Positions 38,820 through 46,465 of a stretch of DNA of 64,000 bases are shown one piece after another (the first letter of the stretch is position 1; each line of letters begins with the position of its first letter). The position numbers and the translations under genes were made by a program. A model generated the notes under the pieces. That model did not search any database, had not been told where the DNA came from, and saw only the letters and a list, made by a program, of their open reading frames with translations. The stretch lies in NCBI GenBank assembly GCA_033442325.1, contig JAWQFM010000006.1:155198-219197 (forward strand), written 5' to 3'. The stretch is from Salpingoeca rosetta. Taxonomy: Eukaryota; Protista; Choanoflagellata.

Positions 38820-41875
<3,056 letters not shown>

Positions 41876-43934
41876 ATGTACTTGCTGGATGCAAAGCGAA
41901 AGGCTGAGCGCAAGCAGAAGGAGCGCGAGGCCAAGGAAAAGCGGGAAAGGAAGAAACAAGAGCTGGCACAAGCCAAGGCGGAACGCAAGCGAGCGGTGGG
42001 TGTTCATGTGTGTGTGTGCGTGGTGTGTGTTCTTGCGTGCGTTCTTGCGTACTGCGTGTGTGCGTACTGCGTGTGTGCGCGTACTGCGTGTGTGTGTGTG
42101 CGTGTGTGCGTGCGTGTGTGTGCGTACTGCGTGTGTGTGCGTGTGTGTGTGCGTGTGTGTGCGTGCTTTTGGAGCACGCTTGCGGCCCAACTTCGTCGTA
42201 ATGGTCTCACACAGCGCTGATGTGCACAAACGCGTGCGTCACGCAACACGAAACCATGCGTAGCTGGAGGCGGCAGCTGCGCAGAAGGAACGGGCGCAGA
42301 TGGAGCGGGCCATGGCCGCATCCAAGGCAGAGGAAGAGCTGAGGCGCAAGGAAGAAGCGCAGATGCAGGAGGCCCTCCGCCGTTCCGTCGAGGAGGAGCA
42401 GGTACGCTTGGCGTATGCAATTGGGAATGTACGCGACACCGGTTATGTGGTACTGTGTTCGACGACGGTGTACAAACGCCTGTCAGAACACAGAGAGAGA
42501 GAGAGAGTGTGTGTGTGTGTGTGAGAGAGTGTGCGAGAGAGAGAGAGAGACATGGAGAGACAGAGAGACAGACAGAGACAGACAGAGACAGAGAAGGGTG
42601 GAGGAATGCACGGGCATGCATGCGTTTGCTTATGTGCATGTGTGTTTGTTTGTGTGGACGGGGTGTGCTCAATTGCCAATTGTTGGTTGTGGCTATGCAG
42701 CGTGCCCAGGCGCTCGCTCGACGACAGGCGCAAGCACGCCAGAAGCAGCAGGCAGCTGCCATGGAGCGGCAACGCCAGCGGCAACTCGAGCAGCAACAAC
42801 AGCAACACCGACAGCAGCAAATGCAGGCGCAGGCTGGGCGGCGACCAACTGCACCACGCGCAGCGCCGCAGCAGCAGCAGCAGCAGCAGTCCGCCTCTGA
42901 GGACCCCGAGCAGATGCTGCGGCAGTGGCGCGACGTCAAGGTCATGTGCAAGGTGATGTCCAGATTCTGTTTGCGTGTGTGTGTGTGGTTGTAATGAGAC
43001 ACGTTTGCACGGGTGTTTGGGTATTGGATTGTTGTGGTGTGTCCCTGTACTTGCGTGTGTTACATGCGTCGGCTTTGTGTAAATCACACCGCGTGACACA
43101 CACACACACCCCCACACGCACACACACACACACACACACCCCACACGCTCGCACGCACGCACACACACACACACGCTCGCACGCACGCACACACGCACAC
43201 ACGCACACACACACACGCACGCACACACGCACGCTGACGCCTGGCTCCGGCACCGCATCGCACCCTGTGCAGTATGTGGGGACGTTTGAGGTTGGCACGG
43301 GCGCCGTTGATCGCGAGTCTGTCAAGGCAGGCATTGCCGTCATGAAGGTTCGTCAACGCACCAGCTGTTGGCGACTGCTCCTGTGTCTGGTGTGGATGTT
43401 GCTTGTCGCATCCATTCGTGTCATTCTCACCACCGCCATCATCATGATGACATACACACACGCACACGCACACGCACGCACACAGGAGTATATTGCGCAA
43501 GGCCGCCCAGCGTGCCTGCTCGTGTGCCTCGAGGGCATCAAAGTGATTGACAACTCTGCATTTGCCGTGGTGATGGCACACGCCCTGCAGAACGTGACCA
43601 TGTGCACCGTTGTCAGAGACCACGCTCTGTTTGGCTTTGTTGCCCGCGACGCAACGCGGCGACAGCAGCAATACTGCCACGTGTTCCACATGCCGAGCCC
43701 ACGCCACGCACAGGGCACCCACACCACCGTCAGCAAGGCGTTCAAGCTCGCCTTTTACAAGCATCGCACGCGACAGGGCCTCGGTGCGTATGTGTGTGTA
43801 TGCGTGTGTGTGTTGTGTGATGTGTATGCGTGTGTGTGTTGTGTGATGTGTATGCGTGTGTGTGTATGCGTATGTGTGTTATCTTCATGCGTACATGTGT
43901 GTGTATGCGTATGTGTGTTTATCTTCATGCATAA

Positions 43935-43984
<50 letters not shown>

Positions 43985-44584
43985 ACGTGTGCTTTCGTGC
44001 GTACCTACTACAAATGTATGCATGTGCACTCCAAACTTGGCATCACCTGCCACGATTTGTCTCTCACCATTCCCCCCTCCCCCTCTTCCCATCTGGCAGA
44101 GACGAGCAGTGACGAGCGGGCGGAGCGGCGGCAGTGGGCGAAGCACAACCCGCTGCAGGGGGCGCCCCACCACAAGGACGTGCGCTCTCTCAGCACAAGC
44201 ACCGCATCCGAGCACTCACCGCGCCGCACACCGTCCAGTGAGGCGGGCCTGAGGGGGATGCCTGCCTCCCCATCTGCTCCACAGCACCACCACCACCAGC
44301 AGCAGCAGCAGCAGCAGGAGAATGATTTGTTGGAGGACGTGCAGGAAGAAGAGCCGCCAGCTGTTGTGGTGACGATGGAGGAGAGATATGACGCGCTTGG
44401 CTCGCAGCACCCCAGCCAGGACCCAGACCTGCAACCCCGCCCACCACAGCGGCAGCAGCGCCAGCAGCGCCAGCAGCAGGGCATGCGGTATGATGGCATT
44501 GTTGAGGAAGAGGTGTTCCCGGGCCCACAGCGCGCGACGCAACCGAGCGCCCCATCCATGGCCGCGCTTGATCGCGAAAGTGAG

Positions 44585-44624
<40 letters not shown>

Positions 44625-44667
44625 TGTCTGTCTGTCTGTGTGTGTGTCTGTGTGTGTGTCTGTGTGT

Positions 44668-44699
<32 letters not shown>

Positions 44700-45443
44700 C
44701 TGTGTCTGTGTGTGTCTGTGTGTGTCTGTGTGTGTCTGTGTGTGTCTGTGTGTGTGTGTGTGTGTGCCTGAATCATGCCAGCTTACCACCATCCGTGGTT
44801 CTTTTCGCGACACCACTCGCTTTCCCTCCTGCCCCCAACCACCTCCACACAACCCTGACCGTGCGACCATCCCACCTTTGTGCAGTGCAAGAGCTTGAGC
44901 TGCTGGCTGAGTCGCAGCAGGAGCAAGACGATGGTGGCCTTGCCTTGTTGGAGAGCGCACCGTGGTACCAAGCAGGTCGGCCACGCGGGGTGTTTGCGGC
45001 GGCTTGGACACATGTTGATGGATGCTGGGTTGCCGTTCTGCACGGTTGATACACAAGCCCACATTTGCATGTGCTCCACATGCACGCTCTCTCAAATGCT
45101 GAAATCTTCGCTTACATTCACTCACCCACTCAAATGCTTGCTCACTCGAACACCCACTCACTCGAACACACATGCACACGTGCATGCACACACAGGGCTG
45201 CCACGCGAGATTGCGATGGAGCTGCTGAGCATGAGCGATGACGGGGCGTTCCTTGTGCGCCAAAGCCAATCGCATGCCGGCCACTTTGCCCTCACCATGA
45301 AAGCCCTCGGCCGCATCCACAACTTCATCATCAAGGTGAGCACCAAGCCAGGACACTGTGCTGCTGCCTCGCTCTGCGCATCCACTGCTGGCAGTCGCTC
45401 ACTGACGATGTGATTGCATGTATCACTCGCGCTCACGTGATGT

Positions 45444-45498
<55 letters not shown>

Positions 45499-46030
45499 AG
45501 CGAACGGCGGGCGGGTTTATGCTGGGCAGTGAGCACGACGGAGAGCGCATCTTCCACGACCTCGGCGAACTCATCCTCTTCCATTCAGAGTGAGCACAGC
45601 AACCACCTCATGTCGTGTGTGTGTGTGTGTGTGTGCTGTTTCCATTTGTTCTTGCTTCTCCTGTTGCTTTTTCTTCTTGTTCATCTTCGTCTTCTCCTGC
45701 TTGAGCGCATCGCTGACATGCACACGCGTGCGCATCTGCACTACAATTAACCACACCAGGCATCGCGGCCTGCTTCCCTGCACGCTGAACCTTGATGCCA
45801 TGAATGCCCTCTCCAACGATCCATCCCCAGAGGGCGACGGCGATGAAGCCGGTATGTGAATTGTGATTGCCTTGGCTCTGCGTGTTTGTGCCCTATGTGT
45901 GTGATTGTTTGTGCCATGTGTCATCTCACACCGCCTCAAACCACTTTGTCTTGCTGCGTGGTGTTATTACACAGATCGTACATCGTTTATTGACCCAGAC
46001 TACGAGTCCCTGAGAGACATCAACTTCTGA
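41876..46030 (+). CDS. Adaptor protein: charged helix, two tandem UIM-like motifs, PTB domain, Tyr-containing linker, SH2 domain (SHC-like domain order)
   Basis: UIM-like MERAMAAS and MQEALRRS (exon 42264-42401). PTB: CK/YVGTFEV..LLVCLEGIKVID..FGFVARD..YCHVF..VSKAFKLAF. SH2: APWYQA/GLPREIAMELL..GAFLVRQSQSHAGHFALTM..IHNFII..FHDLGELILFH..LLPCTL. Final exon 45975-46030 RTSFIDPDYESLRDINF*. Start codon uncertain. Confidence 0.88.
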
Positions 46031-46465
46031 CACCAGCATGTACACACATACACACACCACACACACACACACACATCGCACACATCGCACACATCGCACA
46101 CACCACACACACAACACACACATCGCACACATCGCACACACACACAAACTCGACCTGACGATTATTGTGAATGGTTTCAGTAAACATTCGACTCAATTTT
46201 CGCCGCGAACGATTTGAAAAACCACACACACACCTTGTCATCGCTGTTGTGCTCCGCGACAAGAGCACTCGCTTGCGCTACTGGTTGGTTGTTTGGGTGC
46301 GTTGTTGTCGTTGTTTGGGTGTGGGTGTCTGGACTGAGCAACCACCATCCATCTTGCCACCAGTCTCAACGCCACAGTTGCCAAGAACCTACTCCCTGGT
46401 TGAAGCTTTGAAGACCGCGAGAACAGCTGTACTAATGCATATTCTTTCTGCTTGTTGCACGCGTG

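What the first reader, a model, noticed from the sequence alone, without database searches (positions are those of the whole stretch)
41876..46030. UIM-UIM-PTB-SH2 adaptor: an unusual domain combination
Seen: exon 42264-42401 encodes KERAQ-MERAMAAS-KAEEELRRKEEAQ-MQEALRRS-VEEE, two in-register matches to the ubiquitin-interacting motif core (hydrophobic-x-x-A-hydrophobic-x-x-S with acidic flanks). These precede a PTB domain and an SH2 domain with the intact FLVR arginine. Known: PTB-linker-SH2 is the SHC order, and tandem UIMs mark endocytic sorters such as epsin and Eps15. I do not know an animal protein that combines all three. Inference: one protein able to read ubiquitin, NPxY and phosphotyrosine marks on a receptor tail.
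Basis: partly seen in the sequence, partly recalled or inferred. Interest (0 to 1): 0.75.

Follow-up and report, generated by a model that had tools for sequence, protein, structure and literature searches.

The report
Choanoflagellate PTB-SH2 adaptor with UIM-like motifs
The gene is real and encodes the Salpingoeca rosetta member of an old PTB-SH2 adaptor family (relatives of animal SH2D5/EGFRAP, not SHC) that, in choanoflagellates only, carries a conserved short helix resembling a ubiquitin-interacting motif, which could link ubiquitin reading to phosphotyrosine reading but has not been tested.

Summary
An 11-exon, all GT-AG gene at 41876-46030 (+) encodes the 609-aa Salpingoeca rosetta protein PTSG_01002. 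It has a 127-residue N-terminal helix, a PTB domain, a linker, an SH2 domain with the FLVR arginine, and a DPDYESL tail.

Exon 2 carries two in-register hydrophobic-x-x-A-hydrophobic-x-x-S motifs. Neither reaches Pfam's UIM threshold. Even so, at least one copy is kept in 20 of 21 choanoflagellate orthologues, against 0.7-4% per sequence by chance. A profile of the motif finds the tandem UIMs of ataxin-3 as its best match in the whole PDB. A model built only from other S. rosetta UIMs scores motif 1 at 12.7 bits (shuffle maximum 6.1), but motif 2 at only 1.5. Protein-language-model neighbours are UIM/RAP80 clusters.

The interpretation needs correcting. The organism is a choanoflagellate, not an animal. 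The PTB is Dab/Numb/ARH-like, not SHC-like. The nearest outside relatives are animal proteins named SH2D5(-like) and EGFR-adapter-protein-like. They share the terminal motifs but have no UIM-like motif. Two copies occur only in S. rosetta and Microstomoeca.

Ubiquitin binding is plausible (about 0.6) but untested. I rate this a new variant of a known kind, of moderate interest.

The parts
41876..46030 (+). Whole gene PTSG_01002: 11 exons (41876-41995, 42264-42401, 42701-42952, 43273-43347, 43486-43783, 44100-44579, 44886-44975, 45196-45335, 45501-45589, 45760-45851, 45975-46030), 609 codons plus stop
   Evidence: All introns are GT-AG. Every exon translation is found consecutively in P0001. 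P0001 is XP_004998474.1 / F2TY40. The gene is single copy in the genome.
41876..41995 (+). Exon 1: N-terminal MYLLDAKRKAER motif and the start of the long charged helix
   Evidence: MYLLxAKK is conserved from choanoflagellates to ctenophore, priapulid, annelid and mollusc relatives. AlphaFold2 predicts a helix over residues 2-128 with pLDDT about 90.
42276..42338 (+). UIM-like motif 1 (AAQKERAQ-MERAMAAS-KAEEE; core residues M53, A56, M57, S60)
   Evidence: Scores 12.7 bits against an HMM built from 8 unrelated S. rosetta UIMs; the shuffle 99th percentile is 3.3 and the maximum 6.1. Pfam UIM_2 gives 9.1-9.9 bits on this stretch. The family profile scores it 21.7 bits.
42339..42401 (+). UIM-like motif 2 (LRRKEEAQ-MQEALRRS-VEEEQ; core residues M74, A77, L78, S81). 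This is the 'hydrophobic-x-E-A-hydrophobic-R-R-S' type kept across choanoflagellates.
   Evidence: Scores 27.8 bits against the family profile. The same type is present in nearly all orthologues. It scores only 1.5 bits against the S. rosetta UIM HMM.
42701..42952 (+). Exon 3: Q/A-rich end of the helix, a disordered linker, and the first PTB residues (W..DV.V.C)
   Evidence: helix ends at residue 128; pLDDT below 50 for 128-151; PTB starts near 165.
43273..43783 (+). Exons 4 and 5 (43273-43347, 43486-43783): core of the Dab/Numb-type PTB (PID) domain, residues 171-295
   Evidence: Pfam PID scores 34.8 bits on exon 5. pLDDT is about 97. The top Foldseek hits are the PTB domains of AIDA-1, ARH, Numb, Mint, APPL1, GULP and Dab. 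Best PDB sequence hits are ANKS1B, Numb and ARH.
44135..44161 (+). Conserved linker motif WAKHNPLQG (residues 307-315) in exon 6
   Evidence: W307, A308 and N311 are nearly invariant in choanoflagellates. R-x-W-A-K is also kept in many animal relatives. Its function is unknown.
44963..45790 (+). SH2 domain, residues 481-562, split over exons 7-10. FLVR arginine R506 lies at 45258-45260.
   Evidence: Pfam SH2 scores 48.6 bits on P0001 and 38.2 bits on exon 8. W481, R488, G501, F503, R506 and S508 are invariant in 40 relatives. pLDDT is about 95.
45992..46012 (+). C-terminal tail motif DPDYESL (Y601 at 46001-46003)
   Evidence: D598, D600 and Y601 are at least 90% conserved across choanoflagellate and animal relatives.

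Best explanation
The gene encodes a cytoplasmic adaptor. It is the single S. rosetta orthologue of a PTB-SH2 family shared by choanoflagellates and animals, whose animal members are annotated SH2D5(-like) or EGFR adapter protein-like.

Shown here:
- the gene model;
- a Dab/Numb-class PTB domain;
- a canonical SH2 domain with both pTyr-binding arginines;
- terminal motifs (MYLLxAKK, DPDYxxL) conserved across the family;
- a conserved motif, acidic-hydrophobic-x-x-A-hydrophobic-x-x-S, inside the long N-terminal helix and found only in the choanoflagellate members. It places a hydrophobic, Ala, hydrophobic, Ser stripe on one helix face, as UIMs do.

Inferred:
- The SH2 docks on phosphotyrosines of activated receptor tyrosine kinases, as shown for fly EGFRAP and EGFR.
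- The PTB binds NPx[YF]/NxxF-type peptides without needing phosphorylation.
- The UIM-like helix binds the Ile44 patch of ubiquitin weakly.
- The three weak contacts would then add up on receptors, or receptor complexes, that are both phosphorylated and ubiquitinated. A Cbl gene is present in this genome. This would favour sorting or attenuation of the receptor.
- Alternatively, the motif could drive coupled mono-ubiquitination of the adaptor itself.
- The second motif in S. rosetta is a lineage-specific duplication.
For: Gene model. Identity as PTSG_01002.

Domains: PID and SH2 by Pfam. AlphaFold2 gives pLDDT 97 and 95 for the two domains. Foldseek places the PTB with the AIDA-1, ARH, Numb and Dab class.

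Family: exon 5, searched against 1.84 billion representatives, returns choanoflagellate orthologues and then animal PTB-SH2 proteins. Those proteins are named SH2D5(-like), EGFRAP-like and similar. N- and C-terminal motifs and the SH2 sequence are shared. The choanoflagellate rows form one clade with 100% SH-aLRT support.

UIM reading:
- The motif is kept in 20 of 21 orthologous N-termini, against 0.7-4% per sequence by chance.
- Pfam UIM/UIM_2 give sub-threshold hits at the homologous site in three orthologues.
- The family profile's best hit among 177,635 PDB sequences is the tandem UIMs of ataxin-3 (2KLZ, E 0.011), with both UIMs in register.
- An HMM built from 8 other S. rosetta UIMs picks out the motif at 8-13 bits in five orthologues, above all 1000 shuffles.
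- The language-model neighbours of residues 41-95 are three UIM/RAP80 clusters (scores 0.75-0.81, so a lead only).

Context: a Cbl_N domain gene is present in the genome. Fly EGFRAP binds phosphorylated EGFR through its SH2 and restrains signalling (PMC8407591).
Against: - No Pfam UIM model reaches threshold (best 9.9 bits here and 13 bits in an orthologue, against a cut-off of 21). A genome-wide PF02809 scan did not list this gene.
- The widely conserved form has Arg-Arg between the Ala-hydrophobic pair and the Ser, and a weak acidic run. It scores only 0-5 bits against canonical S. rosetta UIMs.
- Other solved UIMs (Vps27, S5a, Hrs, RAP80) were not recovered by the family profile.
- The motif lies in a 127-residue continuous predicted helix, so it could have a structural or other binding role.
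- The link to vertebrate SH2D5 and fly EGFRAP rests on names that NCBI gives to invertebrate relatives, not on a direct comparison with those reference proteins.
- No binding data exist for any family member's N-terminus.
Confidence: 0.6

Rival explanations
1. The conserved motif is functional but is not a ubiquitin reader. It could be a docking helix for another partner, an intramolecular contact with the PTB or SH2 domain, a short coiled-coil heptad, or a regulated site. On this view its likeness to UIMs is convergent.
For: All Pfam scores are below threshold. The Arg-Arg form scores near background against canonical UIMs. The motif sits in a long continuous helix. Its i, i+3, i+4, i+7 pattern also fits a coiled-coil heptad.
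Against: Four independent similarity tests all point to UIMs and to nothing else. The invariant residues are exactly the Ala and Ser that define UIMs. Acidic residues precede the core in most orthologues.
Confidence: 0.28
2. The two motifs are chance matches inside an ER/K-type single alpha helix and have no specific function.
For: The region is 45% charged and is predicted as one helix over residues 2-128. There is no significant Pfam hit.
Against: Shuffles produce the motif in only 0.7-4% of N-termini, yet 20 of 21 orthologues keep it while the flanks diverge beyond alignment. Animal relatives with similarly charged N-termini score at most 0.3 bits. The helix is rich in Ala and Gln and carries a net charge of +13, which is unlike classic E/K/R single helices.
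Confidence: 0.05
3. The protein is the choanoflagellate orthologue of SHC (PTB-CH1-SH2).
For: It has the same domain order, with a long proline- and glutamine-rich linker between the PTB and SH2 domains.
Against: The SHC PTB scores E 0.08, against 1e-4 for ANKS1B, Numb and ARH. SHC ranks 49th by fold. None of the clusters whose names were looked up among the 114 hits with E of 0.001 or better is called SHC; they are called SH2D5-like, EGFRAP-like or tensin-like. The linker tyrosines (YDAL, YDGI) are not YxN Grb2 sites. SHC's SH2 is not among the best 60 solved SH2 matches.
Confidence: 0.04

Closest known systems
SH2D5 (vertebrates) and EGFRAP/PVRAP (Drosophila): PTB-SH2 adaptors
   Same: N-terminal Dab-like PTB followed by a C-terminal SH2. 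Invertebrate proteins carrying these names are the nearest non-choanoflagellate hits. They share the MYLLxAKK start, the R-x-W-A-K linker motif, the W[YF]QAGIPREIA...F.VR.S SH2 sequence and the DPDYxxL tail. Fly EGFRAP binds phospho-EGFR through its SH2 and dampens signalling (PMC8407591).
   Different: None of the 20 animal N-termini examined carries the UIM-like motif; many have an LPDGACFRPK motif instead. The reference human and fly proteins were not compared directly. From memory, mammalian SH2D5 has lost the FLVR arginine, whereas it is invariant here.
Ubiquitin-interacting motif (Pfam PF02809/PF23625), for example the tandem UIMs of ataxin-3 (PDB 2KLZ)
   Same: A core of hydrophobic-x-x-Ala-hydrophobic-x-x-Ser preceded by acidic residues, in a helix. 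Ataxin-3's two UIMs are the best PDB match of the family profile. The 21-residue spacing in S. rosetta is close to ataxin-3's 20.
   Different: Scores are below Pfam's threshold. The acidic run is weak (KERAQ, KEEAQ). The conserved form has Arg-Arg at the two variable positions. The spacing between copies is not conserved in other species (28 residues in Microstomoeca). Ubiquitin binding is untested.
SHC family (PTB-CH1-SH2)
   Same: The domain order, and a role as a receptor tyrosine kinase adaptor.
   Different: A different PTB class, no YxN Grb2 sites in the linker, a different SH2 lineage, and conserved terminal motifs of its own.
Endocytic UIM adaptors (epsin, Eps15, Hrs/Vps27, STAM)
   Same: They combine UIMs with other cargo- or membrane-reading modules, so that weak ubiquitin binding gains avidity. 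The model proposed here uses the same logic.
   Different: Those proteins have no PTB or SH2 domain, and this protein has no ENTH, EH, VHS or FYVE domain. The similarity is one of proposed function only.

Membership tests
UIM (PF02809 / PF23625) | Core of hydrophobic-x-x-Ala-hydrophobic-x-x-Ser with acidic residues N-terminal to it | tested here: met
   MERAMAAS follows KERAQ and MQEALRRS follows KEEAQ. Ala and Ser are invariant in the 9-row alignment A2. The rows were chosen by that pattern, so the real test is that the pattern occurs in 20 of 21 orthologues.
UIM (PF02809 / PF23625) | Score at or above the Pfam gathering threshold (21 bits) | tested here: not met
   PF02809 gives no hit. UIM_2 gives 9.1-9.9 bits, E 1.4-2.4. 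Orthologues reach 11.3-12.8 bits. The gene is not among the 8 genome-wide PF02809 candidates.
UIM (PF02809 / PF23625) | Similarity to accepted UIMs beyond what chance gives | tested here: met
   The family profile's top PDB hit is the ataxin-3 tandem UIMs at E 0.011. An HMM of 8 other S. rosetta UIMs scores the motif at 8-13 bits in five orthologues, above all 1000 shuffles (maximum 6.1). The result is weaker for the Arg-Arg form, at 0-5 bits.
UIM (PF02809 / PF23625) | Single helix exposing the Ala/Ser face | tested here: met
   AlphaFold2 predicts a helix over residues 2-128 with pLDDT about 90. The motif residues fall at i, i+3, i+4 and i+7.
UIM (PF02809 / PF23625) | Binds the Ile44 patch of ubiquitin | not testable with these tools
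   This needs a binding assay or a complex prediction. The structure tool here folds single chains only.
SH2D5 / EGFRAP-type PTB-SH2 adaptors | N-terminal Dab-like PTB followed by a C-terminal SH2 | tested here: met
   PID lies at residues 165-295 and SH2 at 481-562. The same order is seen in 15 of 16 and later in all full-length relatives.
SH2D5 / EGFRAP-type PTB-SH2 adaptors | Nearest relatives outside choanoflagellates belong to this family | tested here: met
   Hits at E 1e-9 to 1e-3 include 'SH2 domain-containing protein 5-like' (Ptychodera), 'SH2 domain-containing protein 5' (Argiope) and 'EGFR adapter protein-like' (Panulirus), together with ctenophore and sponge proteins. Shared motifs are shown.
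SH2D5 / EGFRAP-type PTB-SH2 adaptors | Groups with reference human SH2D5 or Drosophila EGFRAP/PVRAP in a rooted tree | not tested
The link rests on names given by NCBI.
SHC | SHC-class PTB domain | tested here: not met
   SHC scores E 0.08, against 1e-4 for ANKS1B, Numb and ARH. SHC ranks 49th in Foldseek.
SHC | CH1 linker with pYxN Grb2-binding tyrosines | tested here: not met
   The linker tyrosines read YDAL and YDGI, with no Asn at +2 (exon 6 translation).
Tensin C-terminal module | SH2 followed by a PTB of the PF08416 type | tested here: not met
   The order here is PTB then SH2. PF08416 gives only weak hits in orthologues (15-19 bits, cut-off 27). Tensin-2's SH2 scores E 6.6e-8, behind SHP2, RasGAP, Abl and Crk.
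ER/K single alpha helix | Long helix dominated by alternating E and K/R with few hydrophobic residues | tested here: inconclusive
   Residues 2-128 are predicted as one helix. Only 45% of them are charged, there are 26 Ala and 26 Gln, and the net charge is +13.

The most novel reading that the evidence does not exclude
Choanoflagellates turned the ancestral SH2D5/EGFRAP-type adaptor into a three-way coincidence reader of ubiquitin, an NPx[YF]-type peptide and phosphotyrosine. It would be the first adaptor known to join ubiquitin and phosphotyrosine reading in one chain. It would also indicate that receptor attenuation was the original job of a family that the literature still treats as a poorly understood 'mammalian-specific' protein.
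Probability: 0.3. Interest if true: 0.6.

Novelty: new variant of a known kind. Interest (0 to 1): 0.4.

Why it matters
Choanoflagellates have very large phosphotyrosine toolkits, but how they switch receptors off is little known. A conserved ubiquitin-reading helix on a PTB-SH2 adaptor would give a concrete, testable link between Cbl-type ubiquitination and phosphotyrosine signalling before animals arose, in an organism where transfection and gene editing are available (my own knowledge).

Whatever the UIM question turns out to be, the work shows that SH2D5/EGFRAP-like adaptors are not mammal-specific. They form a family shared by choanoflagellates, ctenophores, sponges and bilaterians. It has conserved end motifs (MYLLxAKK, DPDYxxL) and an ancestral SH2 that looks competent for pTyr binding. 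That can guide work on the poorly understood human and fly proteins.

Tried and rejected
- Pfam on each motif alone (21 and 20 aa) gave nothing.
- phmmer of exon 2 against the PDB gave nothing.
- A genome-wide PF02809 scan did not list the gene.
- The word-based protein search with P0001 found only choanoflagellate orthologues, and none has a precomputed UIM annotation.
- Literature searches for UIM with SH2 in choanoflagellates, and for PTSG_01002, found nothing. Manning 2008, Liu & Nash 2012 and Gray 2014 are not held, so I could not check whether those papers already list this architecture or the family's age.
- The structure-based Atlas neighbours of residues 41-95 are generic long helices and carry no information.
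- The SHC and tensin readings were considered and rejected.
- A tandem, linkage-specific di-ubiquitin reader was considered. It is set aside because the copy number and the spacing (21 or 28 residues, or a single copy) are not conserved.
Searches were done exon by exon by reference. Whole-protein steps used the database entry P0001 returned, which one search shows to hold all 11 exon translations in order.
- No locus fetched looked human.
Full report
**1. What is in the sequence**

Reading the three forward frames across 41800-46100 and choosing GT/AG boundaries gives an 11-exon gene on the + strand. The exons are 41876-41995, 42264-42401, 42701-42952, 43273-43347, 43486-43783, 44100-44579, 44886-44975, 45196-45335, 45501-45589, 45760-45851 and 45975-46030. 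Together they hold 1830 bases, which is 609 codons plus a stop. All ten introns are GT-AG, and most of them hold TG/AC microsatellites.

Searches were made exon by exon, by reference. A search with exon 5 returned the database protein P0001, which is 609 aa long and 100% identical over the exon. A local check shows that all eleven exon translations lie consecutively in P0001, separated only by the five split codons. P0001 is PTSG_01002 / XP_004998474.1 / UniRef F2TY40, a 'hypothetical' or 'SH2 domain-containing' protein of Salpingoeca rosetta. The gene is single copy. None of the loci I fetched looked human.

**2. The observation**

Exon 2 encodes LEAAAAQKERAQMERAMAASKAEEELRRKEEAQMQEALRRSVEEEQ.

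- Exon 5 alone scores Pfam PID at 34.8 bits, and exon 8 scores SH2 at 38.2 bits.
- The whole protein scores SH2 at 48.6 bits. Oddly, PID is not reported for the whole protein. The same gap appears in the precomputed annotation, so public annotation misses the PTB domain.
- AlphaFold2, run with a 40-row alignment, gives one continuous helix over residues 2-128 (pLDDT about 90), a PTB domain at 165-295 (pLDDT about 97), a disordered linker, and an SH2 domain at 481-562 (pLDDT about 95).
- The FLVR arginine (R506), the alpha-A arginine (R488) and W481, G501, F503 and S508 are invariant in 40 relatives.

**3. Are the UIM-like motifs more than chance?**

Pfam does not support them at threshold. PF02809 gives no hit. 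UIM_2 gives 9.1-9.9 bits (E 1.4-2.4, cut-off 21) on motif 1. Each motif submitted alone gives nothing. A genome-wide PF02809 scan lists eight other places.

Conservation tells a different story. The exon-5 search and a later whole-protein search found orthologues in:

- Microstomoeca roanoka
- Salpingoeca infusionum
- Monosiga brevicollis (MONBRDRAFT_27493)
- Choanoeca flexa
- Barroeca monosierra
- Acanthoecidae sp. 10tr
- about a dozen unnamed transcript or metagenome sequences.

Their N-terminal regions are barely alignable. Even so, 20 of the 21 with an N-terminus keep at least one motif of the form acidic-hydrophobic-x-x-A-hydrophobic-x-x-S. The usual version is [DE]-hydrophobic-x-E-A-[MLI]-R-R-S-K. 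The exception is the Barroeca gene model, whose N-terminus is unlike all the others. Shuffling each N-terminus produces such a motif in only 0.7-4% of trials.

Two good copies occur only in S. rosetta and Microstomoeca, spaced 21 and 28 residues apart. S. infusionum has a second copy in which Glu replaces the Ser. Some acanthoecid-like sequences carry degenerate upstream repeats.

**4. Is the motif UIM-like by objective tests?**

Four tests that do not depend on my own pattern agree.

(a) Pfam UIM or UIM_2 give sub-threshold hits (11.3-12.8 bits) at exactly the homologous motif in two further orthologues.

(b) I built a 21-column alignment of nine motif copies entirely by reference (window, L001-L007) and searched it as a profile against all 177,635 distinct PDB sequences. 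The best hit, and the only natural protein with E below 1, is the tandem-UIM peptide of ataxin-3 (2KLZ, E 0.011, 18.7 bits). Both of its UIMs align in register. The remaining hits are designed helical repeats. In the S. rosetta genome the same profile finds only the two window motifs and one other exon. That exon reads EDAMMAEAIRRSLQD and lies in a gene with STI1/ubiquilin-like repeats, supported only by weak Pfam hints.

(c) In the reciprocal test, I built an HMM from the eight Pfam-scoring UIMs found elsewhere in the S. rosetta genome. In 16 of 20 choanoflagellate N-termini it picks the conserved motif as its best segment. Scores are 13.0, 12.7 (S. rosetta motif 1), 10.4, 9.3 and 8.4 bits for five of them. 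Across 1000 shuffles the 99th percentile is 3.3 and the maximum 6.1. The highest score among 20 animal N-termini is 0.3.

(d) Language-model neighbours of residues 41-95 are three clusters carrying PF02809 or RAP80_UIM. Their scores are 0.75-0.81, so this is a lead only.

Against the UIM reading:

- The widely conserved Arg-Arg form scores only 0-5 bits in test (c).
- S. rosetta motif 2 scores 1.5 bits.
- Other solved UIMs were not recovered in test (b).
- The motif sits in a very long helix.

I conclude that the motif is a real, conserved element with UIM character. I put ubiquitin binding at roughly 0.6.

**5. What family is it?**

The PTB is not SHC-like.

- By sequence, the best solved matches are ANKS1B/AIDA-1, Numb and ARH (E about 1e-4). 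SHC scores 0.08.
- By fold, the top matches are AIDA-1 bound to NPxF, ARH bound to the LDL receptor tail, Numb, Mint, APPL1, GULP and Dab. SHC ranks 49th.
- The SH2 is a generic canonical type. Its nearest solved relatives are SHP2, RasGAP, Abl, Crk and PLC-gamma. Tensin-2 comes further down, and SHC is not in the best 60.
- The linker has no YxN sites.

Beyond the choanoflagellates, the exon-5 search returns about 90 proteins at 28-40% identity. At least 38 of them also match this family's SH2 profile strongly. Those whose names I could look up are:

- 'SH2 domain-containing protein 5-like' (Ptychodera)
- 'SH2 domain-containing protein 5' (Argiope)
- 'EGFR adapter protein-like' (Panulirus)
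- 'tensin-like' misnomers (tick, damselfly)
- uncharacterised proteins of ctenophores (Bolinopsis, Mnemiopsis), a sponge (Ephydatia), a priapulid, an annelid, a mollusc and a cestode.

These animal proteins share several features with the choanoflagellate proteins:

- the MYLLxAKK start
- an R-x-W-A-K motif after the PTB
- a nearly identical W[YF]QAGIPREIA...GAF.VR.S stretch in the SH2
- the C-terminal DPDYxxL motif.

A maximum-likelihood tree of PTB plus SH2 puts the 18 choanoflagellate rows on one side of a branch with 100% SH-aLRT support. Inside that group the pairs are sensible: S. rosetta with Microstomoeca, and Monosiga with Choanoeca. The tree is unrooted.

None of the animal N-termini has the UIM-like motif. 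Many have an LPDGACFRPK motif instead. The UIM-like element is therefore either a gain in choanoflagellates or a loss in animals. No outgroup was available to decide between the two.

**6. Known biology of the relatives**

Fly EGFRAP binds phosphorylated EGFR through its SH2 domain. Together with its neighbour gene PVRAP, it restrains EGFR/Ras signalling. The authors discuss endocytic down-regulation but do not mention a PTB or UIM (PMC8407591).

SH2D5 is described as a PTB-SH2 adaptor that binds BCR through its PTB, and it is called 'mammalian-specific' (PMC11684657, PMC12406720). The distribution found here contradicts 'mammalian-specific' if the NCBI names are right. I did not compare the reference human or fly sequences directly.

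**7. Proposed mechanism**

Shown: the modules and their conservation.

Inferred:

- The SH2 docks on pTyr of activated receptor kinases.
- The Dab-class PTB binds NPx[YF]/NxxF peptides independently of phosphorylation.
- The UIM-like helix adds a weak contact with ubiquitin.
- The protein would then prefer receptors or complexes that are both phosphorylated and ubiquitinated. A Cbl N-terminal domain gene is present in this genome.
- Alternatively, the motif could promote mono-ubiquitination of the adaptor itself, as described for other UIM proteins (my own knowledge).
- The conserved C-terminal tyrosine (Y601, DPDYESL) is a likely phosphorylation site, or a YxxL-type site, of unknown partner.

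**8. Verdict**

This is a lineage-specific variant (added UIM-like motifs) of a known kind of adaptor. Its novelty depends on a check that I could not run, namely whether InterPro, SMART or PROSITE already annotate these motifs. Interest is moderate.

Noticed in passing
L009:1501-1560 (G000:C17:319559-319618, + strand): The only other place in the genome that matches the family's motif profile (23.9 bits) is an exon reading ...QAQEDAMMAEAIRRSLQDQ.... It lies just downstream of exons with repeated NPQV/MMQQ segments and a GMGG repeat, and these give weak Pfam hints to Ubiquilin-1-like and STI1 DP domains. It may be a ubiquilin-like gene with a UIM.
   Followed up: partly
P0047, P0059, P0106, P0064, P0032 and other relatives: Papers call SH2D5 'mammalian-specific' (PMC11684657). 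Yet proteins named SH2D5(-like) or EGFRAP-like, with the same PTB-SH2 layout, occur in ctenophores, a sponge, many bilaterians and choanoflagellates. The FLVR arginine is invariant in all 40 aligned.
   Followed up: partly
window 41876-41911 and 45992-46012: Two short end motifs, MYLLxAKK at the very N-terminus and DPDYxxL near the C-terminus, are conserved from choanoflagellates to animals. They have no known function. The tyrosine is at least 90% conserved.
   Followed up: partly
window 44135-44161: The linker motif WAKHNPLQG is nearly invariant in choanoflagellates. Its R-x-W-A-K part is also kept in many animal relatives. It lies in a region predicted to be disordered.
   Followed up: no
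P0001 (whole protein): Pfam PID is not reported on the full-length S. rosetta protein, although exon 5 alone scores 34.8 bits. Public annotation therefore shows only the SH2 domain and hides the PTB-SH2 architecture.
   Followed up: no
window 42008-42166, 42492-42594, 43096-43232, 43791-43983, 44587-44766, 45446-45496, 46042-46146: Six of the ten introns, and the 3' flank, carry long dinucleotide or near-dinucleotide microsatellites, mostly TG/AC and one AG run. Some are GT-rich and others CA-rich.
   Followed up: no
L002:143-1594 and L004:181-1677: Orthologues on marine metagenome scaffolds are uninterrupted open reading frames, whereas the S. rosetta gene has ten introns. They may come from intron-poor choanoflagellates or be cDNA-like.
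   Followed up: no
P0027, P0068, P0069, P0070: These are short (236-319 aa) complete proteins from protist transcriptomes. They have the MYLLRAKEK start, a short charged stretch and the same type of PTB, but no SH2 domain and no UIM-like motif. Their taxon is unknown.
   Followed up: no
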